Made by a program: the position numbers and the translations under genes
IMG/VR virus record: IMGVR_UViG_3300042923_000281
Location: 62,001-126,000 of that record
DNA: 64,000 nt
Strand: one strand, 5' to 3'
The notes under the pieces: generated by a model
What the model was told of the DNA's origin: nothing
The model's input: only the letters and a program-made list of their open reading frames with translations
Databases searched by the model: none
In this document: positions 3,584 to 52,503 of the stretch, one piece after another
Layout of the letters: each line of letters starts with the position of its first letter
Position numbering within the stretch: position 1 is the first letter of the stretch

Positions 3584-3615
3584 CTACATCATGTCCTAGG
3601 TTTGTATTTTTTTAC
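3584..3615 (-). promoter_or_regulatory. Middle/late-type promoter candidate (GTAAAAAAATAC-N13-GATGTAG)
   Basis: Matches 52470-52503; resembles phiKZ middle (AAanntTAC) and late (TATG) consensus as recalled. Confidence 0.45.
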
Positions 3616-3682
3616 CATTCAGCTATTTTCAACAAGTCTAACGCCGTAAACAAACATCGCAACGATCGTTGACACTAGAGTG

Positions 3683-3709
3683 ATGTATTGCCACAGTAAG
3701 TTTGAATCG
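3683..3709 (-). promoter_or_regulatory. Bipartite phage promoter motif, copy 2 (CGATTCAAA-N10-CAATACAT)
   Basis: Same boxes and spacing as 942-968. Confidence 0.7.
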
Positions 3710-3720
3710 AATTGAGAAAC

Positions 3721-3751
3721 AGCATAAAAACGGGAGCCCTAAGGCTCACCG
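3721..3751 (-). terminator. Hairpin terminator with TTTTTATGCT tail
   Basis: GAGCC/GGCTC stem at the end of 3739..4029. Confidence 0.6.
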
Positions 3752-4029
3752 TCTACGATGGGTTCTGCACCACAGATACGACGTAATGCTGCACGACGTT
3801 CAGGCATGTCCTTGAAGATCTCTACCCGTTGACGACGAGAGACAAGACCGACCTTCTTGATCTCCAACCGCTCACGCAGGAGGTGGGAGTCTGCGCAGTA
3901 TTCCAGATGAGGTGTGTGCAACGTGCGACGCTTCTCCTCAGCCGCTTGACGCATGGCCAACAAGATCTTGTCGATGTAGACGATCTCGGCATCAATGTGT
4001 GCCAACTCGTCTTTCACTGAACGACTCAT
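3739..4029 (-). CDS. Hypothetical coiled-coil protein
   Basis: Start MSRSVKDEL with GGAGG RBS, overlapping the upstream stop. Confidence 0.7.
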   Translation of the reverse strand: MSRSVKDELAHIDAEIVYIDKILLAMRQAAEEKRRTLHTPHLEYCADSHLLRERLEIKKVGLVSRRQRVEIFKDMPERRAALRRICGAEPIVDGEP

Positions 4030-4259
4030 CACCATCCCTCCATGTGCTTTAAGGTTTGAAGCAAGGCAAACACGATTGCCCCACAGAAGACCAGGTTGAT
4101 GACACTGGAGACACCCAGCAGTTTGTAGTAACCCCGACGCCACGGTGTACGCTCTTCACTGATCCGCAGCAGGATGAACCGCATGGCAAACAGCATCAGG
4201 ATCATGTACAGCACCACGGCCACCGCAGTGCCCATGAACCACACTCCAGACATGGTCAT
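4029..4259 (-). CDS. Small membrane protein (2 TM)
   Basis: 76 aa, two hydrophobic segments, GGAG RBS, coupled to neighbours. Confidence 0.7.
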   Translation of the reverse strand: MTMSGVWFMGTAVAVVLYMILMLFAMRFILLRISEERTPWRRGYYKLLGVSSVINLVFCGAIVFALLQTLKHMEGW

Positions 4260-4480
4260 CGCGTGCTCCCCAGTTGATAGAGGTCGTAGGCGTACCGATC
4301 AGCCAACACTAGAAAGGTGATCAGGACAAAGATGCCCAGCACGATACGACAACCCTGTAGAGCCCCTACTTCATTCCACAGGTACGTGCTCTTGGCCAGC
4401 TTACCTTCCAACCGTCTGAGGTGGAAGTACAGCATCAAGGACATCACCAAGATAAACAACACCAGCCATGAATTCATCAT
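4256..4480 (-). CDS. Small membrane protein (2 TM)
   Basis: Two hydrophobic segments; start/stop overlaps with neighbours. Confidence 0.7.
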   Translation of the reverse strand: MMNSWLVLFILVMSLMLYFHLRRLEGKLAKSTYLWNEVGALQGCRIVLGIFVLITFLVLADRYAYDLYQLGSTR

Positions 4481-4689
4481 CACCACCCCACGTTAACAAG
4501 TCGTACGTGCCGCATGAACAGCCACGGGACAATAAACATCAACACCATGAACTGAGTAAACCCAGACCACCAGATGATCCGCATGTGATCCCGGTAGCTG
4601 GTGTATTGAATCTTGCTGTGCAGGTCTACGGTCACGACCATACTGAAGGTCACCAGTATCCCCATGATGACCAAGATAATGGACTTCAT
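4480..4689 (-). CDS. Small membrane protein (2 TM)
   Basis: Start MKSIILV; ATGA overlap with upstream gene. Confidence 0.7.
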   Translation of the reverse strand: MKSIILVIMGILVTFSMVVTVDLHSKIQYTSYRDHMRIIWWSGFTQFMVLMFIVPWLFMRHVRLVNVGW

Positions 4690-4898
4690 TGCGCTCCCCC
4701 ATGTAACAGTGCTACACCGATCTTTACCACCATCATGATGCACAGTCCCATTTGGAGAATAGACGCACAACTAGCAGCACCCTTGATGGCTTCAATGTTC
4801 TTCTGCTTGACGTACCCATCTACCCACGAACTACATCCCAGACTGATGACCAGTGCGATGAGTAATAGAAAGTCAGCTACGATCTTGATGTCAATCAT
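4686..4898 (-). CDS. Small membrane protein (2 TM)
   Basis: Start MIDIKIV with G-rich RBS; hydrophobic segments. Confidence 0.65.
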   Translation of the reverse strand: MIDIKIVADFLLLIALVISLGCSSWVDGYVKQKNIEAIKGAASCASILQMGLCIMMVVKIGVALLHGGAQ

Positions 4899-5045
4899 CC
4901 CTGTCCCCAGTTCACTATAAAGCATAAGAGAGGTCGTCGCTCCGCTCCTCCGCTTGCGCATTGTCTTCGTTACACTTCGACAATGCTTTTTATAGCATTT
5001 CGAAATTACTCAGAGGATGAGACGACAACGGAATAAATTACAAAC

Positions 5046-5075
5046 AGCATAACGAGGGACCCGAAGGCCCCTCGC
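5046..5075 (-). terminator. Hairpin terminator after the portal gene
   Basis: CGAGGG/CCCTCG stem with TTCG loop on minus strand; TTATGCTG tail. Confidence 0.7.
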
Positions 5076-5083
5076 TAATACCG

Positions 5084-8000
5084 TTACACCTTCGGTGGTG
5101 GATTGTCAGGCAGGTTGTCCAAGATAGAGCCCTTGTTAGGGAGCTTCAACGCTTTGACAGCCGCATCAGCCTTTCTCTGGTTCTTGTCCTTCTCCCTGTC
5201 CTTCTCTTTCTCCTCCTCAGACTTCTCCTCTTCCTCTTCAACAACAGGAGGCTCAGGATCAGCATCAGGCTCGACTGGATCAGTAGGCTCTTCTACCACA
5301 GGGGCATCAGGGTCCACAGGTTCATCTTCCACCACAGGAGGTTCATCGCCTACTGGAGCTTCAGGGTCTTCCGGATCTACAGGCTCAACCGGTTCTGCGT
5401 CAGGATCAACGGGATCGGTTGGTTCTTCGATCGGATCAGTCGGAGCACCTTCCTCTTCGATAGGTGCCTCAGGATCAACCGGCTCTACTGGGTCCGCATC
5501 AAGATCGATAGGGTCAGTAGGTTCTTCTTCCAGCGGTGCATCTGGCGCCTCTGGATCTACCGGGTCGACAGGGTCGGTCGGTTCTTCCACAGGCTCGACT
5601 GGAGCAGCAGGTTCATCAGGAGCCAGCTCAGGGTTCTCTGCATCCACCTCAGCAGCCGCTACATCAGCATCTGCCAAGTCACCCACTTCCAGACCATTGT
5701 TACCCAACTCCGTGTCAGGTACCGGATCGACGTCGTTGTCTTGAGGAATCAAATCGCTATCCGCGTTCTCATCCACGACAGGGTCAGCCGGCTCTTCAGT
5801 TACAGGTGCATCCGCATCAGGAATCGGTGCGTCTACATCAGGGGCTGGAGCGTCCGGATCTACTGGCGCCTCAGGGTCGACTGGCTCATCGCCCGCTGGG
5901 AGTTCCAGATCAGGATCAGCCGGTGCTTCTGGATCAACCGGATCAGTAGGCGCTACGTCCAAGTCAGGATCAACTGGGTCCGTAGGTTCCGCATCAGGGT
6001 CTGCCAATGCATCTAGCTCGCCTTCTGGAGCAGGTTCACCGTCTGCCGGAGCATCGAGTGCTGCCATTGGGTCTGCATCAGCCGGTGCAGCATCAGCACC
6101 TTCAGCAGGCGCTTCAGCAATGGCCGAGTCATCGCCCAGTTCAGCCGCAGGGTCAGCATTTGGATCAGCATCAAGGTCCGCTGCCGCAGGATCTGCGTCT
6201 GGGTCCAAGCTTGGGTCTGCTGGGTCCGCTGCTGGATCAGCGTTAGGGTCGGCATCGAAGTCCAACTCATCACCACCACTCAAGGATGGATCAGCATCGG
6301 GATCGGCCAATGGATCAGCGTTCGGATCAGTGGCGTCCATACCACCGTCTAAGCCATCACCGCCCTCAGGACCTGCGGTTGCAGCGTTCTTCGCGTCTTC
6401 CAGTTCCGTCTTGCCAGCCGTGAGTTTCTCCAACACCTTCGCACGACGTTTAGCGGCCTTGACCACTTTCTTGACGTACTCGGAGATGGAGTTGTTCAGG
6501 CCATCAAGATGCTCTGCACTGGCCTCGAGCAGATCGAAGACTGGAGAGCCCTCTTCTTCCGAGACAGTGTTGAACACATCGAGTTCTGGCATGACGTTGT
6601 TGTGACGCAGCCAGCGACGTTGGAACTCGGCCTTGACAACAGCCTTGACGTTTGGAATCAGCTCTTCCATGCCGATAGACGAATCTGCTGCGAACATCTC
6701 TTCGTTCATGTAGGCGTCGATGACCTTGTCCAGCGCTTCGCTGTACGAGTCGAACGATTCCATGGACTTCTTGATGTCGCCCACTTCTGGTGCAGGCAGG
6801 CCCACGCAGAGTGCTTCGATGAACTCGTACAGGAATGCATCGACTTGCAGCATGTCGTCCTGTAGGTTCGGATCGCCCTTGATGTGGTCTGGCAGGTATT
6901 GCTTGTTGTCGCTGATCAGCTGACGCATCTCGGTCAGGAAGATCCCCGAGTTCAATACGTAACGGCGCACGAAGTCCGTCAGGAATGGCTCGAACTTCTC
7001 CTGGCTCTGAATCACACGCTTGAGGAGCATCAGGTTGTTCTGTACGACCGTGGTCGCAAAGTCCGACTGGTTGATACCCTCCATGACCTCCGGCGAGAGA
7101 CCGAACATCTGGATGTGACGACGGCGCATGGTTTCTTCAAACTCAGCATCGACTGGCTTGTTCTGCCCTTCACGCTGGTTGACGTTGAAGGTGGTTTCAG
7201 GGTACCGGCTGTTACCGGAGACCACCACGTTCACACCATGGTTCTGAATCTGATCCGCCAAACCCAATGGGTGAGTCGAACCAATGATCTTGCTGAAGCC
7301 TTGACTGTTGACCTTCGCGTGTTCGGAGAGCATGAACTCCACCGTCGACACTGGATCTTCGTCTTCAGGGTCCAGACCGATCTCAACCGTCTTACCGCCG
7401 ACTGCGTTGTTCAGGGTGGCCAAGGTGTTAGCCAACATGATCGAAGCACGGATCGACCCGAGGATCTTGCCGTCTTCCAGCACGGACTTACCTACGCCGA
7501 ATTCGTTGTAGTCAAAGGCGATGTACGTCATCATCTCTGGCGGAACGAACAACATGACGGTCTTCTGACCTTTCATGTGGCGAGAGAACATAATGCGGTT
7601 GATGTTCTCAGTCTTGCCCAGCTCGTAGTTACCCGAGAGAGCACCGCTGCGCAGACGTGCCAACAGATCACGTTCTACGGTGTCGGAGTAGACCTTGCCC
7701 AACTCATCCACGATCTCATTCTGAAGACCGCCCGAACCCTCGAACCCACGACGCGCTTGCTGAATGATCTGCGAGGCGTAGCTGTCGACATTGTTCATCT
7801 GCGAACGGATGTCATCGTAGTACGACGATTGATCCGCAACGTTGATCGGGTTGCCGTCGATGTCGAGCATCACGTAGTAACCCACGTGCTCCGACGGGTT
7901 GCCTGGTACGTGAATCGGGATCACCGACTCAGAAGGCAAGTGCATGACCAGCGGGTGACCGTAGGTCTCAGTGCCGGTCTGTGCATGGGTCAGCAATGGC

Positions 8001-9040: not shown

Positions 9041-9074
9041 GTTTACCTCTATATATCCGTCTGGAAATCGAACG

Positions 9075-15724: not shown

Positions 15725-15937
15725 ATGAGCGAAGAAAGCAATTCCGTAGCAAGGGCCACAAAGAAGCCCGGCTTCACCTCCTACATCGCCATTGCCATTG
15801 TCGTTCTGGTATTGGGTTCCTTTGCGATCGAAGCTGTCGCCGCGCTCAAGGAAGGCCGGAGCATCAATTTCGAGCTGGTTAACAAACTGCTCGATACGTT
15901 GATGTCGCTGATGAATACTCCGTCACCGACTGAGTAA
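15725..15937 (+). CDS. Small single-TM protein
   Basis: Start MSEESN with GGAG RBS; one TM helix. Confidence 0.7.
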   Translation: MSEESNSVARATKKPGFTSYIAIAIVVLVLGSFAIEAVAALKEGRSINFELVNKLLDTLMSLMNTPSPTE

Positions 15938-15940
15938 CAA

Positions 15941-15987
15941 CATAGAGAGCCACCCGCCTGTTTAAGGGCGGGTGGCTCTCTATGCCG
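15941..15987. terminator. Bidirectional terminator between convergent operons
   Basis: Perfect 18-bp inverted repeat 15941-15958/15967-15984; TATGCCG tail. Confidence 0.8.
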
Positions 15988-21530: not shown

Positions 21531-21557
21531 ATGTATTGCCAAAAACGTCTTGAACGT
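21531..21557 (-). promoter_or_regulatory. Bipartite phage promoter motif, copy 3 (ACGTTCAAG-N10-CAATACAT)
   Basis: CAATACAT exact; upstream box partly conserved (TTCAA) at the same spacing. Confidence 0.55.
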
Positions 21558-21580
21558 GATAGCCTCGAGCCAGCATTCGG

Positions 21581-24631: not shown

Positions 24632-26206
24632 ATGGACATCAAGTTATTCCTAGTCAAGTCTGTTACCTTGTTGTACCTCGAGAGTCAAATCGAAGGGTAC
24701 AGTTCGAGTAACGCATCAGTGATCCGTTCAATGTTGAGCGAGATCAAGCTACCCGAAAACATCGGCGACATCGGAGACGGGAGGAACATCCTGTCGAATT
24801 TGCGCTCCACTGTTCTGGAGATGTTGAACAGCGGTGGTTCACAGAGATATGAGCCGGATATGCTGATGCAGCGTATTCGGATGAACCTGCAATCCGATGA
24901 CATCACTTATAAAGCCTTGGAAAAGGTCATCCGCAAGTACCCGGATGAATCGGTGATTCGCAAACACATCAACGACATTTCACGGGAGATGCGCCGCTAC
25001 AAGAACCGTGAGAAACTGCACGAGATCGTTAAGAAAGCTTCCTACACCCTGTCGTTCAACGAAGCCGAGGTTGAAGACTGGGACACCTTTGTACTACAGA
25101 CTGCACAGGACCTCCTGTCGGTCGATATGGAGACAGACGAGCGGGTAGACCCTGCGTTCATCACCAGCATCAACTTCAACGACCCAGCTTCTGTTACAGC
25201 CGCGTTCGCGGACATGAACAAGTCCTTGTCCACCGAAGGTATCATCAAGTTCCCCTTCAAAGCGTTGAACCGCATGATGGGTGTACAAGGTGGTGGCCGT
25301 CGGGGTGAGTTTGGTTTGGTTAACGCCTTACCTCACAACAACAAGTCAGGCACCTTGCTTGACCTGTTCATTGGTACTTGCCTGTTCAACGACCCGTTCC
25401 TGTTTGACCCGGACAAGAAACCGCTCTGCTTGTTCTACAGTACGGAAGATGACATCCCAATCATCATCCAGAAGATCTACGTGATCCTCAAGCAGATGGA
25501 ACTGGGCATGGCAGTCTCTGTTAAGGGTCTTGACCCCGCAGAAGCTTCCGCCTACGTCATTGAGAAGTTGCAAGCCCGTGGTTGGCACGTGGAACTGCAC
25601 CGGATCAAAGGTTCGTCGTTTACGTACGCCAAGTACATCAAGCATTTGGAGCAGTACAAGGCCAAGGGCTTCGAAGTCTGTGCCTCGTACATCGACTACT
25701 TGGCCATGTTCAGCAAGGACGGTTGCATCCAAGGTTCCACTGGCGACGACCTGCAAGATCTGTACAAGCGGACACGTGAATACACGTCAGCCGAAAAGAT
25801 CCTGCAAGTCACAGCGCATCAGCTCTCGACCCAAGCCAAGGAAGAGAAGCGGATGAACCCGACGAAGTTCATTCGGGACATGCCGGGCGGAGGTTACTAC
25901 CAAGGCTGTAAGAAACTGGACACCGAAGTCGACTGGGAGTTCTACGTCAACAAGCAAGTGGTCAATGACGGCGCGTACATCGAGTACCTGTGGGGTAAAC
26001 ACCGTGGCGTGGTGGAGCCAACTCCAGAGGCGCACAAGTACTTCGTCCTCAAGTTCAACGATCACCCAATGTACGGCGTAGCGTATGACTTCCATCTGGA
26101 AGTGGATCTGAGCTACAAGATCGTTGGTGGCAGACCAAGTTCCCAAGGTGGTGGGATGGCTTGGAATGACATCGATGAGATGAACGATTCCCGCATGGCG
26201 GCATAG
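24632..26206 (+). CDS. dnaB: DnaB-like replicative helicase (phiKZ gp118-like)
   Basis: GGRRGEF..VNALPHNNKSG Walker A variant, YIDYL Walker B, TAHQLS motif. Confidence 0.8.
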   Translation: MDIKLFLVKSVTLLYLESQIEGYSSSNASVIRSMLSEIKLPENIGDIGDGRNILSNLRSTVLEMLNSGGSQRYEPDMLMQRIRMNLQSDDITYKALEKVIRKYPDESVIRKHINDISREMRRYKNREKLHEIVKKASYTLSFNEAEVEDWDTFVLQTAQDLLSVDMETDERVDPAFITSINFNDPASVTAAFADMNKSLSTEGIIKFPFKALNRMMGVQGGGRRGEFGLVNALPHNNKSGTLLDLFIGTCLFNDPFLFDPDKKPLCLFYSTEDDIPIIIQKIYVILKQMELGMAVSVKGLDPAEASAYVIEKLQARGWHVELHRIKGSSFTYAKYIKHLEQYKAKGFEVCASYIDYLAMFSKDGCIQGSTGDDLQDLYKRTREYTSAEKILQVTAHQLSTQAKEEKRMNPTKFIRDMPGGGYYQGCKKLDTEVDWEFYVNKQVVNDGAYIEYLWGKHRGVVEPTPEAHKYFVLKFNDHPMYGVAYDFHLEVDLSYKIVGGRPSSQGGGMAWNDIDEMNDSRMAA

Positions 26207-26208
26207 CA

Positions 26209-26245
26209 GCATAGAGAGCGGACCATTGGTCCGCTCTCTATGCCG
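26209..26245. terminator. Bidirectional terminator
   Basis: Perfect 16-bp inverted repeat 26209-26224/26228-26243; TATGCCG tail. Confidence 0.8.
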
Positions 26246-32610: not shown

Positions 32611-32928
32611 CTAAGCTATTTCTGGCAGGCGAGCGTTGTGACGCTCTCTTAATGTCAAGGCCAGGTTCATACGCCCTGTCGAGACACCGTACCCGTTCTT
32701 TACAGCGTAGTTCCTGACCAGCTTGGTGACTTGGTTACGAACCTTGTCAAACTCCCCTTCTTTCAACTGCGTGGCGAAGTAGTCCCCAACGAAGTACACG
32801 GTCACACTACCGGACTTCCTACATTCCTCATCCTTTACCGTGACCGTTCCGAGTTTGCGAAACCCCGGTAACTCGATCAAGCTAACGACGAGCTTTTCAT
32901 TAAGCTTGTGTATTGTTAGCGCTTCCAT
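32611..32928 (-). CDS. Hypothetical protein
   Basis: 105 aa; first gene of the leftward operon. Confidence 0.7.
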   Translation of the reverse strand: MEALTIHKLNEKLVVSLIELPGFRKLGTVTVKDEECRKSGSVTVYFVGDYFATQLKEGEFDKVRNQVTKLVRNYAVKNGYGVSTGRMNLALTLRERHNARLPEIA

Positions 32929-32944
32929 AAATCCCCCTGATGTA

Positions 32945-33050
32945 CATATAACTGACCCCTTCGTTTTTATTTTACAGTGGTCTCGAAACGATAATGTGTG
33001 GTTACAATACGGTTCAATTTACAAAATAAATAGACCCCCGATACATTATG
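32945..33050. promoter_or_regulatory. Divergent middle/late-type promoter pair (AAA(T/A)A(C/G)-N13/14-TATG on each strand)
   Basis: Minus: GTAAAATAAAAAC-N14-TATG (32975-32945). Plus: AAAATAAATAG-N13-TATG (33023-33050). Confidence 0.45.
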
Positions 33051-38072: not shown

Positions 38073-38870
38073 ATGGCCATGTCCAACGCCGTACTTGAAG
38101 CCGCCCTTAAAGCGGCAGTCGCTCGCCTTGTAGCCGCATTGCGCGACAAAGACGCCCTCAACAGCTTGAAGCTGGAAGGCAAAACTCTGGCCGAGATCAC
38201 CACCCTGATCCTGGCTGGCAAAGCTGCAACCGCTGGTGTGGCTGATAACGCACTGGCAATCGGCGGGAAGGACCTCGCAACACTGCAATCTGATTACGCT
38301 GCTGCTATCGATGCAGCCGTCGCCGCTGCCAAACTCGAACTCGAGGCTGCCATCGGAGCCATCGACAAAGAGTCCATTGGCCTGGGCAACGTCGAAAACT
38401 TCGGCGTGGCTACCGAAGCTGAAGCACTGGCTGGCGCTGCTGACAAATACGTCACTGCGTTCCTGGCTGAAAAGATTGCACAGAAGAAGATCGACGACCT
38501 CGTCGGTGGCGCTCCAGAAACCCTGGACACCATCAAAGAGATCGCTGACGCTCTGAACAACGATCCGGACATCATCAACACCCTGATGAGCCAGATCGGC
38601 ACCAAAGAAACCCCTGAAGGCGCGCAAGCCAAGGCCGACGCCGCGCAGACTGCTGCAATTGCAGCCGCTGCTACCGACGCCACCACCAAGTCCGGTCAAG
38701 CACTGACCGATGCGAAAGCCTACACCGACCAGAGTGTTGCGGGTTTCCAAGAGCAACTTGACGAACAAGCAGGACAAGTCGACGCGTTGGCGCAAGCCCT
38801 CATCGATTCGTTCAACGAAGCGTCCGACGCGCTCGAAGGCGTAGAACCTGAGCCAGCCCCAGGCGTCTAA
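38073..38870 (+). CDS. Tail-fibre-like/virion structural protein
   Basis: IGLGNVENF..AT..EA and LVGGAPETLDTIKEIADALNND motifs common in fibre proteins. Confidence 0.65.
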   Translation: MAMSNAVLEAALKAAVARLVAALRDKDALNSLKLEGKTLAEITTLILAGKAATAGVADNALAIGGKDLATLQSDYAAAIDAAVAAAKLELEAAIGAIDKESIGLGNVENFGVATEAEALAGAADKYVTAFLAEKIAQKKIDDLVGGAPETLDTIKEIADALNNDPDIINTLMSQIGTKETPEGAQAKADAAQTAAIAAAATDATTKSGQALTDAKAYTDQSVAGFQEQLDEQAGQVDALAQALIDSFNEASDALEGVEPEPAPGV

Positions 38871-38879
38871 GCAAAGCGA

Positions 38880-38917
38880 CATAGAGCGAGGGCCAATGGC
38901 CCTCGCTCTTTATGCCG
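38880..38917. terminator. Bidirectional terminator
   Basis: AGAGCGAGGGCC/GGCCCTCGCTCT stem; TTATGCCG tail. Confidence 0.8.
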
Positions 38918-39505: not shown

Positions 39506-39871
39506 TCATAGTATTTCCCCACGCACCACCAAACGGTAGCCATTGTCCTCTGCCACATCCTGAATGAACTCAACAAAGATGTGTCGGTGACAGAACTTAC
39601 CCGCCTTGCAGTAACAGGCCACACAGATGGAACCCTCTTGTTCGAGGAACTCTTGAAAGGCTTCAGGATAGAGCCTGAACTGCTCTCTGAGGCGTTCTAG
39701 GTACAAGACCGTGTACTGCTCGTCTGTGACCTCATTACGCTTGTAAGCCCACAGTACGGACGGCTCAGGTGCAAAGACAGCGAGACCTGACTTGACAGTG
39801 ATGTCGATCAGGGTGACTTGCCTCTCCTTAGCCTTGCGCCATTGGGAGAGAGCGATGGTGTAGAGTTCCAT
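39506..39871 (-). CDS. DUF488-like protein
   Basis: FAP...L..YK, Y...Y...L and C.C...FCHR pattern. Confidence 0.6.
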   Translation of the reverse strand: MELYTIALSQWRKAKERQVTLIDITVKSGLAVFAPEPSVLWAYKRNEVTDEQYTVLYLERLREQFRLYPEAFQEFLEQEGSICVACYCKAGKFCHRHIFVEFIQDVAEDNGYRLVVRGEIL

Positions 39872-39902
39872 AATTCCCTCCTTCGTCTATACAGTGACAC
39901 GG

Positions 39903-40335
39903 CAAAATAAAAATAAAAGCCATCCGCAGTGCATCCCCCAGTGCTCTATCCGAAGACAGAATACTGGAGGCTGCACTAAAGATGGCATCACTCCATGAGG
40001 AGTGGCACTTCGTGACGCCTGATGTCCCCTTTCAGCCGGATCGGGAGACACCATTGGCAGCGACGTGGAGCACACGCTCAGACGCGTCATCGTTTACCGT
40101 AACACACCACGGGTAGCGTTGGCGTGGGGCTACGGAACCGCAACAACCCTAACTATCACGACGAGTTCATTAGGGGCAACGAAATAGTAGCTGAGGGCGC
40201 GATGCCCTCAGCTGTGTGGCCCATCCAATGGGGGAGTGGACGGGTACCACGAGTGCGAGAGCAAATGCTCTCCTCTTTTCTACGCAATCAAGCGCATGGA
40301 TGCTGGATTATCTGTTAAAGAACAGGTCCTACATA
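39903..40335 (-). ncRNA. Candidate ~430-nt structured non-coding RNA
   Basis: TATGTAG start motif, many hairpins, terminal hairpin plus U tract, no credible ORF. Confidence 0.45.
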
Positions 40336-40356
40336 CTATACAGGCTTTTTGCCAGT

Positions 40357-41805
40357 TTAGATGTCCATGAGTGCTTGAAGAGCGCGGGTGTTGGTGTCCC
40401 CGTCACGAATGCAGGCTGCAACCCAGGTGTCGTAATGGCGAACCAGCACGTCACCGGCACGGTCAACGACCATGTTGGTGTTCAGGCAGAACTCGTGATT
40501 GATTTCACCTTCGAGTGCAGCTTTACCTTCAGCGGTCAGCAGACCGTTGGAGTCCAGCCACGACATCAGTTGACGCTGAATGCCAACAACGGCATCGACG
40601 TCCTGAACACGAGTGGTGATGTTTTCGATGACGATTGGATCAGCAACCGATTCAGTCGAGACCTTCTTCTTCGGGTTGCCTTCGGCGTCCAGTTCTTCTT
40701 CAGCTTCCGGATCGATTGGATCGGTCGGTTCAGCATCAGGATCTACTGGATCGGCATCGGCGTTGGCCGCAGCGATTTCAGCTTCTGGGTCGATCGGGTC
40801 AGTTGGCTCTTCGATTGGATCGACAGGGTCAACTGGATCTACTGGATCAGCGCCCGGGTCAACGGGGTCGACCGGATCTACTGGGTCCACAGGTGCATCG
40901 GGATCGACAGGGTCGACCGGCGCATCAGGGTCCAGTGGGTCAGTGCTGCCAGCGGCATCCGGATCAACCGGTGCGTCTGGATCAACAACGTCGCCTTCAC
41001 CGTTGTTCTGAGTCGACGGGGTGTCTTTCTCGATGGTGCTGGCATTGACGCCGTCATCAAGTTTCGGCCCCGATGGATTCTCACCGCGGTGCTGTTCGAT
41101 CAGGTCGCCCATGCGGTCTTCACCGTCAGTGCCAATGGCAGCAGCTTCGGAGCGAGCAGCTTCTGCGCTCTCTTCAGCACTTTCCTTGGCCGTGGCAACC
41201 AGCGCTTCGATACGGTCAACCGCGTCGGACATGTCGCCCAGGACTTGGGTTTGTTCCAGGTCTTCCATGGAGACACCCAGAGCAACCAGACCGTCGCCCA
41301 TGCGGCGAGCCACGTTCAGCACCAGAGGACGGGCTGCTTCGATGGTCATGCCTTCCATGGAGATCACTGCTTTCACAGTGTCGATGTTTTCCTTGAACAG
41401 GCCCAGGGCTTCTGCCTTGAAGTTCAGGGATTCCAGCGAGGCCGTGGTTTCGGTGTCGCGGGTGGTGAACGGCACAGGCTCTTCGTTATCAGCCTTGGCT
41501 TGCAGAGCTTGCTCGATGGTCTCGACTTCAGTCAGACGAGGAGTAAGCACGTCTTGCATGATCAGCTCGACTTGAGCTTGTGGCTCGCTCACGCCATCGA
41601 CGACCTGCAAGTCGGCCTGATGATCAGCTTGTTCAAGCACGTTTTCAGCCAGCACCATGAAGGACGAAGCGGAATCGCTTTCCAACGATGGGGTCAGCAG
41701 AAGTGCCTGACCAACCGACATCAGAGCTTCGAGACTGGTGCGGTAGGCTTGAGTCTCGTGAAGCATTTGAGCCGCGTTTGGTCGTGCGGTGGTATTGTGC
41801 GTCAT
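40357..41805 (-). CDS. Putative inner-head/virion protein with propeptide and DP repeats
   Basis: 482 aa; many S/A-x-E sites (TSLE, PSLE, ASLE, SMEG, STES); DPVDP repeats. Confidence 0.7.
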   Translation of the reverse strand: MTHNTTARPNAAQMLHETQAYRTSLEALMSVGQALLLTPSLESDSASSFMVLAENVLEQADHQADLQVVDGVSEPQAQVELIMQDVLTPRLTEVETIEQALQAKADNEEPVPFTTRDTETTASLESLNFKAEALGLFKENIDTVKAVISMEGMTIEAARPLVLNVARRMGDGLVALGVSMEDLEQTQVLGDMSDAVDRIEALVATAKESAEESAEAARSEAAAIGTDGEDRMGDLIEQHRGENPSGPKLDDGVNASTIEKDTPSTQNNGEGDVVDPDAPVDPDAAGSTDPLDPDAPVDPVDPDAPVDPVDPVDPVDPGADPVDPVDPVDPIEEPTDPIDPEAEIAAANADADPVDPDAEPTDPIDPEAEEELDAEGNPKKKVSTESVADPIVIENITTRVQDVDAVVGIQRQLMSWLDSNGLLTAEGKAALEGEINHEFCLNTNMVVDRAGDVLVRHYDTWVAACIRDGDTNTRALQALMDI

Positions 41806-45097: not shown

Positions 45098-45152
45098 ACA
45101 AAGAAAAAAGAAAGCACTGGAGAGCAGCCCTAGGGCTGCTCTCCTTATGCCG
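45098..45152. terminator. Bidirectional terminator
   Basis: GGAGAGCAGCCC/GGGCTGCTCTCC stem; TTATGCCG on plus, TTTTTTCTTTG on minus. Confidence 0.8.
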
Positions 45153-46108: not shown

Positions 46109-46142
46109 GACATGCTCCTTAGCATGAGGGTAAAGGGTAGGG

Positions 46143-46505: not shown

Positions 46506-46515
46506 GGGACTCTCC

Positions 46516-46680: not shown

Positions 46681-46720
46681 GATACGTTCCTTCACTAGGT
46701 TAGGGTCATTCACCGTTATC

Positions 46721-46747
46721 ATGTATTGTTGAAAAGAATTCGAATCG
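46721..46747 (-). promoter_or_regulatory. Bipartite phage promoter motif, copy 4
   Basis: CGATTCGAA-N10-CAATACAT; within a 36-bp exact repeat shared with 51181-51216. Confidence 0.75.
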
Positions 46748-46750
46748 AAT

Positions 46751-46790
46751 CGGCATAAAGGCCAGGAGCACTCGCTCCTGGCCTATGCTT
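46751..46790 (-). terminator. Terminator abutting promoter copy 4
   Basis: AGGCCAGGAGC/GCTCCTGGCCT stem; TTTATGCCG tail. Confidence 0.75.
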
Positions 46791-47037
46791 ACTTGGGGGC
46801 TGCTTTATTAGCGGCATTGATCAACCGGATGTCAGCGTTGCAGTTGGTAAGGGACTGGGTCTGACGGATGTAGGCCGAGGTCATCTGCACTAACTTCTCA
46901 TCAGGAGTCGCCGTGGTGTATCGTTCGCCTTTAGGAGGAGAAGCGGATTCACATTCAGGCACCGCTTGGTACTGACGGTTGCCACACCCTGCCAGCATCA
47001 GGACGACAAACAGCAGGATCACTTGAAGGGAGCGCAT
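46789..47037 (-). CDS. o-spanin-like outer-membrane lipoprotein
   Basis: Signal peptide with LAGC lipobox; overlaps the 3' end of the upstream TM/coiled-coil gene; two further Cys. Confidence 0.7.
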   Translation of the reverse strand: MRSLQVILLFVVLMLAGCGNRQYQAVPECESASPPKGERYTTATPDEKLVQMTSAYIRQTQSLTNCNADIRLINAANKAAPK

Positions 47038-47522: not shown

Positions 47523-47569
47523 GAGAACTCCTCATAAAGGGGAGAGCCGAAGCCCTCCCCTAGATTCAC

Positions 47570-47959: not shown

Positions 47960-47995
47960 GGTGTGTTCCTTAGGATAGTTGGCAGAGGACTTTAA

Positions 47996-48559
47996 TTAGT
48001 CCTTCATACTATCCTCTTCATGGTCTTCCTTGAGCGAGAACATACTGACCGTACGCCGACCATCGGCATGGATCACAGGCTCTTGAGTCGAGTCGCCCAA
48101 ACGGGCAATCACATCGAACATGATGTTGCTCATTTCCATCTGGACCGCAGGACGATCAGATAGCTTATTGAACATGTGATCGCCAAACTGGAAGTACAGG
48201 TGCCGGGCTTTGATGCCTTGCTCATGGATGAAGACAAACTTCTCCCGTTGAGGAGTCGGCATGTACGTGCCCAAGATCATGATCCGTTCACCCCACTCGC
48301 ACAAGTCGCGTGCAATGTCAGTGTAGAAACAGATCTCAAGACCCTTTTCAATGTACATCCCTTTGACCATGTCGTACATGGAGTCACGCAACATGGCTCT
48401 AGCGTACTCCACACCCAGTCCTGTGTTCAGACTGTAGAAGATGTAGTACGTGTGCTTGTCCAACAGCGTCAATCGAATGCTGTTGGCCAGCACCTTACGA
48501 AGCTTCTTCTTTCTCCGCGGCAATAAGCAGAGGTCCAAGAGCATCCGCAGGCGTTTCAT
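47996..48559 (-). CDS. Hypothetical protein
   Basis: ~187 aa; start uncertain because of overlap with the upstream ORF. Confidence 0.65.
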   Translation of the reverse strand: MKRLRMLLDLCLLPRRKKKLRKVLANSIRLTLLDKHTYYIFYSLNTGLGVEYARAMLRDSMYDMVKGMYIEKGLEICFYTDIARDLCEWGERIMILGTYMPTPQREKFVFIHEQGIKARHLYFQFGDHMFNKLSDRPAVQMEMSNIMFDVIARLGDSTQEPVIHADGRRTVSMFSLKEDHEEDSMKD

Positions 48560-48995
48560 AATGGTACTTCCCATCCTTAAAGCTCTCCAAGCGATGTTTG
48601 AGATCCATGTCCATCACTTCTGACATTGCCTTCGTCAGACGGTAAATAGAGACCATGGCATTGTTCTTGTGTACCACTGCACGGCAATTGACCAACTTGC
48701 CAGTTCGCCATTCAGGCTTGAAGAATTCCATGGAGGCGATGTACGCAGCCTCAGTGAAGGCGTACCCAGTCGACCCCTCACAGACGATGTGCCAGAAGTC
48801 ATACTTGTCATCGTCCTTAAAGGTCACATCCCATGTAGAAGCATGCAGACTCAGTGACCCGCTGTAGACCCCGAACGCATCACGTGCATCAAGGTCAAAG
48901 AAATCTCCACGAACGGCCTCGCTATCGTATAGGTAGTCATCCAACTCCCGGGAGTCAGGATGCAGGCCTTCACGGAATACCAACAACTTTTTCAT
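48495..48995 (-). CDS. Hypothetical protein
   Basis: 166 aa in co-directional run. Confidence 0.7.
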   Translation of the reverse strand: MKKLLVFREGLHPDSRELDDYLYDSEAVRGDFFDLDARDAFGVYSGSLSLHASTWDVTFKDDDKYDFWHIVCEGSTGYAFTEAAYIASMEFFKPEWRTGKLVNCRAVVHKNNAMVSIYRLTKAMSEVMDMDLKHRLESFKDGKYHYETPADALGPLLIAAEKEEAS

Positions 48996-49058
48996 GGTGT
49001 AAGGCCTTAGCTAGTTCTACACCATCTCAGCACTTTTTCTTTATTAACGGTGAACGTC

Positions 49059-49526: not shown

Positions 49527-49580
49527 CAAAGAAAAAAAAAGAGGCTAGAGACAGGGGACCTTCGGGTCCCCTGTCTATTC
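49525..49580. terminator. Bidirectional terminator
   Basis: AGACAGGGGACC-TTCG-GGTCCCCTGTCT; long T tract ending CTTTG on minus. Confidence 0.8.
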
Positions 49581-49582
49581 CG

Positions 49583-49951
49583 TTACGACATCAGCCAGAT
49601 CGGCTTGATGTCACTGAGTGGATAGGTCTCACCGTCAACAACGATCTTGACGGGGTCCGTTGAATCGCCCGAGTAAGTGACACCTTGGATAGACCCCATC
49701 CCAGCGGGAGTCTTAACCAACATGCCAACCGACGGGTTCCACATGACGCCCTCGCCATCGAACTCCACGGTGCCGCTTTCAGGGTCTGGCGTGGCCATAC
49801 TCTTCTTGAGGCGCGCGATGATCTCGCTGTTCATGGAACGATGGTTCTCTTTCGCCACCTCCTGAATCTGTTCACGCATGCCATCAGGCAGACGTACAAC
49901 GAACTTATCAGCAGTACGGGAAGAGTAGATTGCTTGTTTCAAAGGACGCAT
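49583..49951 (-). CDS. amrZ: AmrZ/Arc-family ribbon-helix-helix regulator with non-AmrZ C-terminal domain
   Basis: [27 protein letters not shown]...[12 protein letters not shown] matches recalled Pseudomonas AmrZ N-terminus almost exactly. Confidence 0.85.
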
Positions 49952-50021
49952 GGTAAAGCCTCTTGCAAGTGGGACCCTAGAGTCCCGGGTTATGGTGGTG
50001 AAGTGCCATTATGGCGATGTA

Positions 50022-50792
50022 TCAACGGCCGGTCAAGAAGTTCTTCGCTTGTTCCTGAGTAAGGTTCACCAAACCCTTACCGTGGAAACGGCTAGCCGAA
50101 GTACTGATCCCGGTGAACTCGTCCCCGCCCAAGTGCAGCACGGCAGAGACATTCGACTTGGTCACGTGAAGCACACCAGCAACGCCATCAACGGAGCATT
50201 TGTGGTAGCCACGTGCCAACTCGGTATTGCGGGTCTCGAAGTCAACCGAAGACAACTCGATGACGTCAGGACGACGCAATTTGGCCACGAACGAACTCCA
50301 GAAGACTGGAGATTGATCGGGTTGTACTGGGTTCAACACCGCCCGAGGACGGGAGATGCTGACCACCTTGTCACCATTTCTATCCTTGACTTGTTCAAGG
50401 ATAGCTTCCGAGCTGGAAGCCATCATTTCTTCGCCAAACTGACGGATGCTCGGAATGGTCCCAGGCGCCTGTTCAAAGTCAAGACTGACGTTGCTCGTAG
50501 CAGTGCTGGGCGAACGGTAGGTCATGAAGTCGAATGGGCCGTCAGTGTCCTTTTTATCAGCCATGTCGGCTCCTTCAGCTTTTTCAATGACGGTTTCGGT
50601 GATGGCCACTTCCACTTTCTGGGTAGTGGTTTGTTGTACCCGAGCACGCAGGATGGCTTTACGCTCTTCCATTTGCTCAGGGGTGAGTTTGTCATCGCCT
50701 TTACGAGCCTTGACAGTCTTCCAGCCGAGACCGCCAACGATAGCAGCAGCAACAGCACCCACACCAACGATTACGGCAACTTGCTTTTCCAT
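50022..50792 (-). CDS. Hypothetical protein with N-terminal membrane anchor
   Basis: 256 aa; N-terminus resembles 324..881; AGGAGTTTCACC-ATG leader identical to 28..147. Confidence 0.8.
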   Translation of the reverse strand: MEKQVAVIVGVGAVAAAIVGGLGWKTVKARKGDDKLTPEQMEERKAILRARVQQTTTQKVEVAITETVIEKAEGADMADKKDTDGPFDFMTYRSPSTATSNVSLDFEQAPGTIPSIRQFGEEMMASSSEAILEQVKDRNGDKVVSISRPRAVLNPVQPDQSPVFWSSFVAKLRRPDVIELSSVDFETRNTELARGYHKCSVDGVAGVLHVTKSNVSAVLHLGGDEFTGISTSASRFHGKGLVNLTQEQAKNFLTGR

Positions 50793-50822
50793 GGTGAAAC
50801 TCCTTTCAGTTCCGAGGTAAGT

Positions 50823-51140
50823 TTATTGTACTTGACGCAGGCTAGTGGCTTCGATCATCTTGGCAGTCGCCTCGTCCATGATCTTCTCAATTGCCATGCG
50901 GTCTTTCATGCCAACGCTCTGAAGGATCAGATCGTCAGCTTCTTGCTCCAGCTCCAAGGCACGGGAGAGGTTGCTGGCACGCAGGGCAGCTTTCTCGATA
51001 CGCTTGGCGTTCTTCAAGGCTTCGTATTTACGCTTGCCTTGCCAGCTCCGATAGACTCGCTTGATGGCAGTCCAGATGGACACCTTCTCTTGAGTGGTCG
51101 AAACACGGGATTCTTCCAGTTGACGGATGAGTGCGAACAT
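50823..51140 (-). CDS. Hypothetical helical protein, probably early
   Basis: Start MFALIR, GGAG RBS, after promoter copy 5. Confidence 0.7.
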   Translation of the reverse strand: MFALIRQLEESRVSTTQEKVSIWTAIKRVYRSWQGKRKYEALKNAKRIEKAALRASNLSRALELEQEADDLILQSVGMKDRMAIEKIMDEATAKMIEATSLRQVQ

Positions 51141-51183
51141 GTTGATCTCCATTGATCAGGGTTAGGGTTATGTCAGCGTAATC

Positions 51184-51210
51184 ATGTATTGTTGAAAAGA
51201 ATTCGAATCG
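51184..51210 (-). promoter_or_regulatory. Bipartite phage promoter motif, copy 5
   Basis: Identical to copy 4 over 36 bp. Confidence 0.75.
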
Positions 51211-51213
51211 AAT

Positions 51214-51250
51214 CGGTATAAGGAGCCAGGGCAATTGCCCTGGCTCCATG
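51214..51250 (-). terminator. Terminator abutting promoter copy 5
   Basis: GGAGCCAGGGCA/TGCCCTGGCTCC stem; TTATACCG tail. Confidence 0.75.
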
Positions 51251-51553
51251 TCAGCATTTGGTGCAGGCCATCTTGTAGAATTCGTTGTTGATCTCGATGA
51301 GTTGATCAACCGATGTAGCGGTGTGCAATGCATCAATGAAACACCCTGCCGCCCCTTGGATGGTCTTCATCAGGTGCTTGGCTGCTTCGAACTCATCACC
51401 TGACAACTTGTCGAAGGAGGTCCGCTTGAGCAACTGCAACATGATGTTCATGTGACTGGCAGTAATGCGGGCAGCCATCCAGCGTTCAGGGATGTCTTTG
51501 TGACCCGGTGAAGTGCTATTGGCAAAGGAAGTAGAAACGTGGACGAGTGACAT
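51251..51553 (-). CDS. Hypothetical protein
   Basis: Start MSLVHV with GAGG RBS. Confidence 0.65.
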   Translation of the reverse strand: MSLVHVSTSFANSTSPGHKDIPERWMAARITASHMNIMLQLLKRTSFDKLSGDEFEAAKHLMKTIQGAAGCFIDALHTATSVDQLIEINNEFYKMACTKC

Positions 51554-51595
51554 GAGACACCTCAAATTCAAGACTATAGGATTGGTATCTCGGCA

Positions 51596-52476
51596 AAACA
51601 AAAAAAGAAAGAAGTCTTGGGACACTGTTCGTCATCATTCGCCTCAGGGAGATCAGCCCCTTACTACGTTTCCGAGTCGACAGTGTCCCGTAACCTTGTG
51701 TAGCGCTTGTCTTCCTCATCCCCCGAGCCCTTTCACCAAGTGCGTCATCGCGTAGTGCGAGGCCTTGCGTTAATCAGTCGTAGGTTTGGATCGGACTGGA
51801 GGCCATTGCCATCCAATTCAACCGAACTCAATCGGAATCAATAGTCATCAAATGTGTTCACTGACACGGACTATTGATTAGCTCTCGTGCACCTTAGGCA
51901 CGCGCTGGATAGTCCGCTCAGACACCGCCGTGCGATAGCCCTCTGCTGGTTTCACGACGCACACTTGCGAAGCTCGTGCCATGAAGAGTACACCTTCTAA
52001 GCGAGCCATTGCTGGCATCGCCCTTGGGAGAAGACCTTTCCCCAAGTCCTGATGGTGCATCTTATCCGACGACGCAATTGCGCTCTTCTCTTGCTTAGCG
52101 ACTGCACGATTGTGCTCTTCCGCTTGGGCAGACAAGGTGACAGCTAGGGCCAACGCCACGAGAGTGGAGAAGCCGCGGGTTCTGATCAGTAGCTCCTTAG
52201 AGGCTTAATTGAACGCTCATGAGTTATCAATGGTCTCCAGTGCTACGGTGCACCTACCGTTCCACGCGCCTTATGCGTGAGGTAGGGCACCGAAGTCACT
52301 GAAACGGATGTAACGGTCCCGGTAATGCGCGGCGGGTCATCGGTCTCATTCGGCGGCGTCACGAGTGACACGGCCTTTAGAAGACGTTGTACTGATGTCC
52401 AGATGCGGCGCACGGAACCAAAGAACGATCCGAACAATGGCACGATCCTTAATCGATGTCACAGTGCTACTACATA
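51596..52476 (-). ncRNA. Candidate ~870-nt structured transcript (ncRNA, or structured mRNA for an ATC-start exported peptide)
   Basis: Promoter motif at 52470-52503, many long helices, terminal 10-bp stem plus T tract. Confidence 0.45.
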
Positions 52477-52503
52477 CAACTCGACCGAAACGTATTTATT
52501 TAC
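52470..52503 (-). promoter_or_regulatory. Middle/late-type promoter candidate (GTAAATAAATAC-N15-TATGTAG)
   Basis: Similar to 3584-3615 and 32945-32975. Confidence 0.5.

What the first reader, a model, noticed from the sequence alone, without database searches (positions are those of the whole stretch)
3584..52503. Three dispersed non-coding units share an ATGTAG start motif: possible ncRNA regulon
Seen: the three longest gene-free structured regions (about 3140-3590, 39900-40335, 51600-52476) all begin on the minus strand with (T/G)ATGTAG. Two also carry GTAAA(A/T)AAATAC 13-15 nt upstream, as does the divergent promoter at 32945-33050. Known (recall): phiKZ non-virion RNAP late promoters carry TATG at the start site and middle promoters an A-rich TAC element upstream. 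Inference: a co-expressed set of middle/late structured RNAs, possibly acting in nucleus export, packaging or host control. This is my best candidate for an undescribed system in the window.
Basis: inference. Interest (0 to 1): 0.6.

Follow-up and report, generated by a model that had tools for sequence, protein, structure and literature searches.

The report
Jumbo-phage promoters; one new structured RNA
The shared ATGTAG motif most likely marks promoters for the phage's own RNA polymerase, placed in front of three unrelated units: one is a new, strongly structured ~435-base non-coding RNA kept in about 15 related giant phages, and the other two are small-protein genes with long conserved untranslated regions.

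Summary
The window comes from a 277-kb phiKZ-like jumbo phage related to Pseudomonas phage pPa_SNUABM_DT01. The motifs are real. GTAAAWAAATAC occurs only twice in the whole genome, both times 12-15 nt upstream of KATGTAG. In all three regions the motif and the first ~20 transcribed bases are the best-conserved stretch across relatives.

The geometry matches published phiKZ promoters: an A-rich ...TAC box near -24, and TATG with G as +1. The same box+TATG also precedes an ordinary gene and the phage's tRNA cluster, so it is a promoter class and not an ncRNA signature.

The three units are not homologous to each other.
- **R2 (39900-40332, minus strand)** is a genuine non-coding RNA. It has no conserved ORF. 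Forty of 85 predicted pairs show compensatory changes across 13 sequences, the folding z-score is -7.5, and there is no Rfam match.
- **R1** is a two-hairpin leader with an internal terminator-type element, followed by a conserved 55-65-aa ORF.
- **R3** carries one or two small ORFs and a 3' untranslated region that is better conserved than the ORFs.

All three end at a clade-specific terminator motif (hairpin + U-rich + AUGCCG). The "ncRNA regulon" reading is only partly supported. No transcript data could be obtained.

The parts
3603..3615 (-). R1 upstream A-rich box GGTAAAAAAATAC (middle-promoter-like)
   Evidence: Conserved as GGTAAAWAAWWAC in 8 genomes (A7).
3584..3590 (-). R1 start motif GATGTAG. 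The presumed transcription start is the G at 3587.
   Evidence: It reads TATAGGAG in G004, G006 and G007. The start position is inferred from phiKZ, not shown.
3495..3583 (-). R1 leader. It has a 5' hairpin (3566-3584, loop AGGUACCA), then a long terminator-type hairpin (~3515-3563), then UAUGCCG (3505-3511). Possible attenuator or source of a short RNA.
   Evidence: A9: 22 predicted pairs, 7 with compensatory changes. The TATGCCG terminator motif is characterised.
3266..3460 (-). R1 small ORF, 64 aa, with conserved motif LxLVRRxLRD
   Evidence: An ORF at the same position in 8 genomes. Annotated in DT01 as PA10_00042. No family match.
3138..3186 (-). R1 terminal hairpin followed by UUUAUGUC (terminator-like)
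   Evidence: Read directly from the sequence. It resembles the terminator motif.
40329..40341 (-). R2 promoter-like core GTATAGTATGTAG, with no A-rich box upstream
   Evidence: Together with the next ~20 nt it is invariant in 13 phage sequences (A6 and A10). Variants occur in L052 and L053.
39900..40332 (-). R2, a ~433-nt structured non-coding RNA
   Evidence: No conserved ORF. Of 85 consensus pairs, 95% are canonical and 40 show compensatory change; the maximum in 500 shuffles was 33, and 6-11 when partners were slid. MFE z-score -7.5. Many G-U pairs fit the minus strand. No Rfam hit at E<=10.
39997..40009 (-). Conserved R2 segment GGUGCCACUCCUC (anti-Shine-Dalgarno-like; GUGCCACUCCUC is invariant in the 13 aligned sequences). 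It is predicted to pair with the invariant 5' end GUAGGA.
   Evidence: The two partner bases after CUCCUC vary as AU, AC or GC, and each combination still pairs with the 5' GU. This gives only one-sided support.
39900..39977 (-). R2 terminator: a long covarying hairpin (39928-39977), a U-rich tract, then UGCCG
   Evidence: The end reads UUAUGCCG in G002 and UCUAUGCCG in L053, which is the canonical motif.
39506..39871 (-). Downstream DUF488 gene with its own TATAG promoter-like motif (39887-39891)
   Evidence: PF22751 at 3.4e-07 and phrog_2450. The TATAG is replaced by TATGTAGGAG in M047.
52492..52504 (-). R3 upstream A-rich box GGTAAATAAATAC
   Evidence: Conserved in 5 genomes; it reads GGTAGTTWGTTTTTAC in G005-G007.
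52470..52476 (-). R3 start motif TATGTAG, followed by the near-invariant TAGCACTGTGACAT
   Evidence: The 60-nt bin starting at 52500 is 82% identical against 38-63% in the upstream gene.
52243..52443 (-). R3 ORF-a, 66 aa. It is open in all 8 genomes but its coding status is uncertain.
   Evidence: In the pairwise alignment with DT01 the indels inside the ORF are 9, 6, 3 and 3 nt; the 8-genome alignment also contains gaps that are not multiples of 3. There is an AAGGA + ATG/GTG start. There is no third-position bias in substitutions. Annotated in DT01 as PA10_00292.
51878..52186 (-). R3 ORF-b, a small protein of ~93-102 aa with a signal-peptide-like N-terminus
   Evidence: Substitutions are biased to third positions (37/26/46 and 36/27/48). 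A conserved AAGGAG lies 6-8 nt before a conserved ATC.
51591..51877 (-). R3 conserved 3' untranslated region. It ends in a long covarying hairpin (~51612-51697), a U-tract and UGCCG (51591-51611).
   Evidence: Identity island of 78-90% against 43-68% in neighbouring genes. In A8, 18 of 34 pairs show compensatory change, mostly in the terminal hairpin. Overall folding z-score is only -1.7.
32942..32974 (-). Same promoter class in front of an ordinary gene: GTAAAATAAAAAC, N14, TATGTAC, 20 nt before the 105-aa gene at 32611-32928
   Evidence: The box and TATG are conserved in G001, DT01 and G004; the bases after TATG are not (A11).

Best explanation
The shared motif is the core of promoters read by the phage's own phiKZ-type multisubunit RNA polymerase. 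By analogy with phiKZ, transcription starts at the G of TATG, so the RNAs begin GUAG.... At R1 and R3 an A-rich box ending in AC sits about 20-28 nt upstream, which is the geometry of phiKZ middle promoters. R2 has TATAG directly upstream instead.

These promoters launch three unrelated transcription units. Each is closed by a clade-specific terminator: a GC-rich hairpin, a U-rich tract and (A)UGCCG.
- R2 is a stand-alone ~433-nt non-coding RNA. It has a multi-helix fold and a likely closing helix between its invariant 5' end and a conserved CCACUCCUC segment. I think it most likely acts in trans as a stable protein-binding or scaffold RNA during infection, and not as an antisense regulator.
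- R1 is a small-protein mRNA. Its leader holds a 5' hairpin and an internal terminator-type hairpin, so it can yield a short ~85-nt RNA or read through into the ORF (attenuation).
- R3 is a small secreted-protein mRNA with a long, strongly conserved 3' untranslated region.

Shown: the motifs, their conservation, the covariation, the ORF content and the terminator motif. Inferred: the transcription start, the polymerase, the timing and the function of R2.
For: Motif rarity and pairing.

Conservation of the motif and the first ~20 nt in up to 13-15 related phage contigs.

Geometry matches phiKZ, which has AAanTTACc at about -24 and TATG with G as +1 (PMC4666361).

Phage RNAP genes: and PMC8541153.

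The same box+TATG sits just after a terminator at the head of the tRNA cluster and before an ordinary gene, where only the box and TATG are conserved.

Terminator motif: 36 of 39 intergenic TAT[GT]CCG sites lie about 40 nt after the end of a same-strand gene. Fifteen of them are at convergent junctions. Mean hairpin energy is -22 kcal/mol against -11 for random 49-mers.

R2 covariation, lack of a conserved ORF and fold stability.

R1 ORF and leader. R3 ORFs and conserved 3' UTR.

No sequence-level homology among the three units (nhmmer profiles).
Against: No transcript data.

R1 has GATG rather than TATG, and in distant relatives it reads TATAGG. The exact start nucleotide and core are therefore uncertain.

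One R2 relative (L052) has TGTG in place of TATG but keeps TATAG. The true core may be TATAG or TGTAG.

No terminator separates R2 from the upstream 482-aa gene, so R2 could also be made as that gene's 3' UTR.

The pairing between the 5' end and CCACUCCUC involves invariant bases and has no two-sided covariation.

The trans-acting function of R2 is a guess. No complementary targets were found in the phage genome, and the host genome was not examined.
Confidence: 0.6

Rival explanations
1. One reading: the three units are a co-expressed regulon of structured non-coding RNAs that act together, for example in nucleus export, packaging or host control.
For: All three share KATGTAG and begin GUAG if the G is +1. 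R1 and R3 share the rare A-rich box. All three carry conserved structured segments.
Against: R1 and R3 encode conserved small proteins. R2 lacks the box. The three RNAs are not homologous. The same promoter class serves a normal gene and the tRNA cluster. The UAG after TATG is not conserved at other promoters of the class, and it differs in distant R1 homologues.
Confidence: 0.1
2. R2 is not a free-standing RNA. It is a long cis-regulatory leader (riboswitch- or attenuator-like) controlling the downstream DUF488 gene. The terminator hairpin and the anti-Shine-Dalgarno-like CCACUCCUC would serve as the expression platform.
For: R2 is followed by the DUF488 gene in every genome where the downstream flank was read (L053 shows a promoter-like TATAG and Shine-Dalgarno there). 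A terminator lies directly before that gene. The conserved CCACUCCUC is complementary to its AGGAGG ribosome-binding site, and RNAalifold on five sequences paired them.
Against: A promoter-like TATAG (TATGTAGGAG in M047) sits between the terminator and the gene, which suggests a separate promoter. Gene order is conserved throughout this clade, so linkage says little. On the RNA alone, CCACUCCUC pairs instead with the 5' end. The aptamer would be unusually large, at ~430 nt. No alternative anti-terminator fold was identified.
Confidence: 0.2
3. The conserved motifs are not promoters. They are RNA-processing sites or DNA-level signals, and the units are 3' or 5' UTRs of neighbouring genes.
For: No terminator lies between the upstream genes and R2 or R3. 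There is no direct evidence for transcription starts.
Against: The box-spacer-TATG layout fits phiKZ promoters. At the tRNA cluster the same layout follows directly after a terminator. Conservation extends about 10 nt upstream of the presumed start, into sequence that would not be transcribed.
Confidence: 0.08
4. The resemblance among the three starts is chance. Nothing links them beyond being intergenic.
For: KATGTAG is common in the window because of codon usage. The starts of the regions were defined by the motif itself.
Against: The composite motif has zero expectation in shuffles. Each site is the most conserved piece of its region across phages that are only 60-75% identical there.
Confidence: 0.02

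Closest known systems
phiKZ middle and late promoters read by the non-virion RNA polymerase (Yakunina et al. 2015, PMC4666361)
   Same: TATG at the start site. An A-rich box ending in TAC centred near -24 (R1, R3, the 32948 promoter and the tRNA-cluster promoter). The phage encodes phiKZ-like multisubunit RNAP subunits.
   Different: The box sequence is GTAAAWAAWWAC rather than AAanTTACc. The genome is 54% GC. R1 has GATG or TATAG. R2 has no box. Nothing was tested biochemically in this clade.
5'UTR-derived small RNAs made by premature termination in phiKZ and 201phi2-1 (PMC11512511)
   Same: The R1 leader has a promoter, a short structured RNA and a terminator-type hairpin directly upstream of an ORF. 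It is conserved across related giant phages.
   Different: No sequence similarity was examined or claimed, the gene context differs, and expression is not shown here.
Large structured non-coding RNAs associated with phages (GOLLD, ROOL)
   Same: R2 is large (>400 nt), multi-helical, phage-encoded, supported by covariation and of unknown function.
   Different: There is no Rfam match even at E<=10. R2 is smaller, is confined so far to one jumbo-phage clade, and does not lie next to the tRNA cluster.
Intrinsic terminators with conserved sequence motifs in giant phages (phiKZ and 201phi2-1 terminator motifs, PMC11512511)
   Same: GC-rich hairpins, often with a UUCG loop, followed by a U-rich tract. 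They recur genome-wide with a shared sequence motif.
   Different: Here the motif is CAUAG...hairpin...CUAUGCCG. It was not compared directly with the published logos, because figures are not held.

Membership tests
phiKZ-type middle promoter | A-rich element ending in TAC centred about 24 nt upstream of the start | tested here: met
   R3: the box spans -28 to -19 if the G of TATG is +1. R1: -26 to -17. The 32948 promoter and the tRNA-cluster promoter are similar. R2 does not have it.
phiKZ-type middle promoter | Transcription by the phage-encoded RNAP at middle times of infection | not testable with these tools
phiKZ-type late promoter | TATG with the G as the transcription start | tested here: inconclusive
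   TATG is present at R2, R3 and 32948 and is conserved. R1 has GATG or TATAG. L052 has TGTG. The start site itself was not mapped.
phiKZ-like phage with its own multisubunit RNAPs | Genes for split beta and beta' subunits, and a phiKZ-type capsid | tested here: met
   phrog_2943 polymerase at 1.5e-132, phrog_3231 major head protein at 4e-164, and PF00562 above its cut-off. PF00623 is weak. The DT01 paper reports vRNAP and nvRNAP.
Any Rfam family (riboswitches, ribozymes, GOLLD, ROOL, RNase P, tmRNA, 6S and others) | Covariance-model score at or near the gathering threshold | tested here: not met
   Zero hits at gathering score over the window. Only noise at E<=10 in R1, R2 and R3. No tmRNA or tRNA in the window.
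Conserved structured ncRNA (generic criteria) | Base pairs kept through compensatory changes, no conserved ORF, and stability beyond shuffled sequence | tested here: met
   R2: 40 of 85 pairs show compensatory change, against a maximum of 33 in shuffles and 6-11 when slid. No conserved ORF. z-score -7.5. For the R3 3' UTR only the terminal hairpin meets this.
One RNA family comprising R1, R2 and R3 | Detectable sequence or profile similarity between the three | tested here: not met
   nhmmer profiles of each unit hit only their own locus in the genome at E<=10.
Intrinsic terminator | Stable hairpin plus U-rich tract at the 3' ends of genes, including convergent pairs | tested here: met
   36 of 39 intergenic TAT[GT]CCG sites follow a same-strand gene end, and 15 are at convergent junctions. 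Hairpin energy is -22 against -11 kcal/mol for random 49-mers. Termination itself was not assayed.

The most novel reading that the evidence does not exclude
R2 is the founding member of a new class of large (~430-500 nt) structured non-coding RNAs specific to a clade of phiKZ-like jumbo phages. It would be made from its own phage-RNAP promoter and act in trans, for example as a protein scaffold or decoy inside the infected cell. The clade would also use a conserved leader module (5' hairpin with AGGUACCA loop plus an internal terminator) as a portable attenuator in front of different small genes.
Probability: 0.45. Interest if true: 0.65.

Novelty: new variant of a known kind. Interest (0 to 1): 0.5.

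Why it matters
Promoters and terminators have been mapped for only a few phiKZ-like phages, all AT-rich. This analysis gives a sequence-level picture for a GC-rich, DT01-like clade that has no published transcriptomics:
- an early-like motif,
- a box+TATG class,
- a distinctive terminator motif.

These features can guide annotation and phage engineering.

The analysis also isolates one well-supported new structured RNA (R2). R2 has about 15 natural sequence variants, which is enough to design probes, knock-downs and structure probing. Large structured RNAs in phages are rare and mostly unexplained.

Finally, two of the three "non-coding" gaps hold conserved small ORFs that standard annotation handles poorly.

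Tried and rejected
- **Rfam.** Gathering thresholds and E<=10 gave nothing. ARAGORN found no tRNA or tmRNA in the window.
- **TATGCCG as a late promoter.** I first read hairpin+TTTATGCCG as phiKZ-like late promoters. I rejected this because 15 sites sit at convergent gene ends and the TATG lies in the hairpin stem. It is a terminator motif.
- **5' end pairing with the DUF488 start codon.** RNAalifold on five sequences proposed that the R2 5' end pairs with the DUF488 start region. I dropped this because the gene side varies without compensation and the pairing disappears with more sequences.
- **R2 as coding.** A 67-aa ORF exists in the three closest genomes but is broken in the others.
- **R2 as a 16S rRNA mimic.** The shared 10-mer GTAAACGATG is at chance level, and there is no SSU rRNA hit in Rfam.
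- **R2 as an antisense regulator of phage genes.** No complementary sites were found for its invariant segments.
- **R2 core in bacterial genomes.** There were two hits, both chance matches inside what reads as a conserved protein-coding gene (probably hemB, by my reading of the translation). One metagenome hit to the 19-mer (L048) is an unrelated AT-rich contig.
- **Homology among R1, R2 and R3.** None was found.
- **Not done.** I did not build a covariance model, because R2 exceeds the size the tool can calibrate. I did not pass a 500-600-character structure string to the count of structure pairs; the equivalent counts were computed in Python.


Full report
**Source and relatives.** The window is bases 62001-126000 of a single 276,978-bp contig with direct terminal repeats and about 54% GC. 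The only DNA relative in the GenBank phage collection is Pseudomonas phage pPa_SNUABM_DT01. IMG/VR and metagenome scans added about a dozen related 250-277-kb contigs.

Window proteins match a phiKZ-type major head protein, a virion structural protein and a "polymerase" PHROG. The genome has an RNAP beta-like hit to PF00562 above its cut-off. The DT01 paper reports phiKZ-like virion and non-virion RNAP subunits (PMC8541153).

**The observation.** On the minus strand I find:
- R1: GGTAAAAAAATAC, a 12-13-nt spacer, then GATGTAG (3615 to 3584).
- R2: GTATAGTATGTAG (40341 to 40329).
- R3: GGTAAATAAATAC, a 15-nt spacer, then TATGTAG (52504 to 52470).

The composite box-spacer-KATGTAG pattern occurs twice against zero in shuffles. 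The box occurs only twice in the whole genome. The 7-mer alone is not informative. Its 28 copies (7.8 expected) are almost all inside genes, mostly GATGTAG antisense to the gene, where it reads CTACATC. The promoter at 32942-32974 has a similar box and start, not identical ones (GTAAAATAAAAAC, N14, TATGTAC).

**Conservation.** In alignments with relatives that are only 60-75% identical across these regions, the motif and the following ~20 nt are the best-conserved segments.
- R2: GTATAGTATGTAGGACCTGTTCTTTMACA is invariant in 13 sequences.
- R3: TATGTAGTAGCACTGTGACATC is invariant in the five closest genomes (plus an exact match in G007) and nearly so in G005 and G006.
- R1: the box and ...TAGGAGAAGGTACCA are conserved in eight genomes.

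In distant relatives the R1 start reads TA(G/T)TATAGGAG and the R3 box reads GGTAGTTWGTTTTTAC. What is kept is therefore an A/T-rich ...AC box, a spacer and a TAT(G/A)-type core.

**What the motif is.** For phiKZ, late promoters are TATG with G as +1. Middle promoters carry AAanTTACc centred near -24, and some also have TATG (PMC4666361). Taking G of TATG as +1, the boxes here span about -28 to -17.

The same arrangement stands in two other places. One is directly after a terminator at the head of the phage's tRNA cluster, outside the window (Tyr, Asp, Gln, Asn and one long tRNA-like gene). The other is 20 nt before an ordinary 105-aa gene. There the box and TATG are conserved in G001, DT01 and G004, but the bases after TATG are not.

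The motif therefore marks a promoter class. The UAG after the G belongs to the individual RNAs. TATGTA is common among such sites.

Two other recurrent signals emerged:
- An early-like motif (TTCGAATT...)AATACATTAT-N5-GTGAG at about 15-20 sites.
- A terminator motif consisting of a GC hairpin whose stem base reads CAUAG.../...CUAUG, followed by CCG. Thirty-six of 39 intergenic TAT[GT]CCG sites lie about 40 nt after a same-strand gene end, and 15 are at convergent junctions.

R2 and R3 end in variants of this terminator motif (UUUUGCCG; UUAUGCCG in G002; UCUAUGCCG in L053). The R1 leader contains one.

**R2 (about 39900-40332, minus strand).**
- No ORF is conserved. A 67-aa frame in the three closest genomes is broken elsewhere.
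- RNAalifold on 9 sequences gives 88 pairs, 35 with compensatory change.
- On 13 sequences restricted to the RNA there are 85 pairs, 95% canonical and 40 compensatory. This compares with a maximum of 33 in 500 column shuffles and 6-11 when partners are slid.
- The single-sequence MFE is -186 kcal/mol with z = -7.5. The opposite strand gives z = -5.5. The many conserved G-U pairs fit the minus strand.
- The invariant 5' end GUAGGA...CUU is predicted to pair with the conserved GUGCCACUCCUC. The two bases after CUCCUC vary as AU, AC or GC, and all combinations still pair with the 5' GU. This is weak, one-sided support.
- A long covarying hairpin plus U-tract closes the RNA.
- A TATAG promoter-like motif lies between this terminator and the DUF488 gene, and it reads TATGTAGGAG in one relative. 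R2 therefore looks like its own unit.
- There is no Rfam match at E<=10 and no paralogue in the genome.
- No complementary targets exist in the phage genome.
- The core pattern is absent from 185,579 representative bacterial and archaeal genomes, apart from two chance matches inside what reads as a protein-coding gene (probably hemB).

**R1.** After the start comes a 5' hairpin (GGAGA / UCUCC, loop AGGUACCA), then a long terminator-type hairpin followed by UAUGCCG. Seven of 22 pairs show compensatory change.

A small ORF of 55-65 aa follows. It has the conserved motif LxLVRRxLRD and is present in eight genomes. A further hairpin plus UUUAUGUC precedes the RNase H-like gene.

One relative (G006) carries a second copy of this promoter and leader in front of a different 149-aa ORF. 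This suggests a portable leader module.

**R3.** About 30 nt after the start, ORF-a (66-77 aa) is open in all eight genomes and has an AAGGA plus ATG/GTG start. In the pairwise alignment with DT01 its internal indels are 9, 6, 3 and 3 nt, although the 8-genome alignment also contains gaps that are not multiples of three. Its substitutions show no third-position bias (26/23/30 and 31/25/32). Its coding status is therefore open.

ORF-b has a signal-peptide-like N-terminus and a coding-type substitution pattern (37/26/46 and 36/27/48). A conserved AAGGAG sits 6-8 nt before a conserved ATC. The frame upstream of that ATC is not conserved, and the first canonical start is 9-10 codons further in.

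The 3' ~280 nt are far better conserved than either ORF: 78-90% identity against 43-68% in flanking genes, G000 versus G003. They end in a long covarying hairpin plus U-tract/UGCCG. Overall folding is not exceptional (z = -1.7).

**Verdict.** The "regulon of three ncRNAs" reading is only partly supported:
- R1 and R3 share a promoter class that is also used by the tRNA cluster and by normal genes.
- R2 has a different upstream context.
- The three transcripts are unrelated.
- Two of them encode small proteins.

The piece of lasting interest is R2. It is a new, well-supported structured RNA of unknown function, restricted so far to this jumbo-phage clade.

All statements about transcription starts, timing and function are inferences. 

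Noticed in passing
Genome-wide; in the window for example 15937-15987, 26195-26245, 38867-38917, 45102-45152, 46751-46800, 56662-56710: A clade-specific terminator motif: a GC-rich hairpin, often with a UUCG loop, whose stem base reads CAUAG.../...CUAUG, followed by CCG. There are 39 intergenic TAT[GT]CCG sites. Thirty-six lie just after gene ends, and 15 are at convergent junctions.
   Followed up: yes
For example window 33020-33040 (+), 21540-21560 (-), 46725-46745 (-), 51180-51200 (-), 900-940 (-): A strong early-promoter-like motif, (CGATTCGAATTNTTTTCAAC)AATACATTAT-N5-GTGAG. TACATTAT occurs 14 times in the genome, 13 of them intergenic and 12 of those on the minus strand.
   Followed up: partly
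L042 (G000:206700-208900; outside the window): A tRNA cluster (Tyr, Asp, Gln, Asn and a 112-nt tRNA-like hit) on the minus strand. It sits behind the same A-rich box + TATG promoter. It has ~200-650-nt spacers and a tail of unknown content that may hold further structured RNAs.
   Followed up: partly
window 52186-52200 (minus strand): R3 ORF-b seems to start at AUC. AAGGAG lies 6-8 nt upstream of a conserved GATCAGA. The frame upstream is not conserved between relatives, and the first GTG or ATG would remove the charged start of the signal peptide.
   Followed up: partly
window 52243-52443 (minus strand): ORF-a is open in all eight genomes, and in the pairwise alignment with DT01 its indels are multiples of three. 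Its protein sequence is very divergent and substitutions show no codon-position bias. It may be a fast-evolving micro-protein, a translated leader, or not coding at all.
   Followed up: partly
L034:1601-2176 (G006): A second copy of the R1-type promoter and two-hairpin leader, about 550 nt upstream of the first, precedes an unrelated 149-aa ORF. The leader looks like a reusable module.
   Followed up: no
window 51600-51900: The R3 3' untranslated region is the most conserved stretch in a 2.8-kb neighbourhood (78-90% identity). Apart from its terminal hairpin it has no strong predicted fold and no consistent ORF. The reason for its conservation is unexplained.
   Followed up: partly
window 39887-39891, 51574-51578, 9049-9053, 3480-3484 (minus strand): TATAG lies 13-33 nt before several start codons. 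It occurs 26 times in intergenic sequence against 7 expected. It is replaced by TATGTAGGAG in one relative, so it may be another form of the TATG promoter core giving very short 5' UTRs.
   Followed up: partly
window 4487-5083 and 48575-49049: Two further gaps of ~500-600 nt in my rough gene call hold terminator-like TATTCCG sites and ORFs of uncertain status (4468-4920 on the plus strand; 48495-48995 on the minus strand). I did not examine them.
   Followed up: no
window 40357-41805 (minus strand): The 482-aa acidic protein directly upstream of R2 has no Pfam or PHROG match. No terminator separates it from R2.
   Followed up: no
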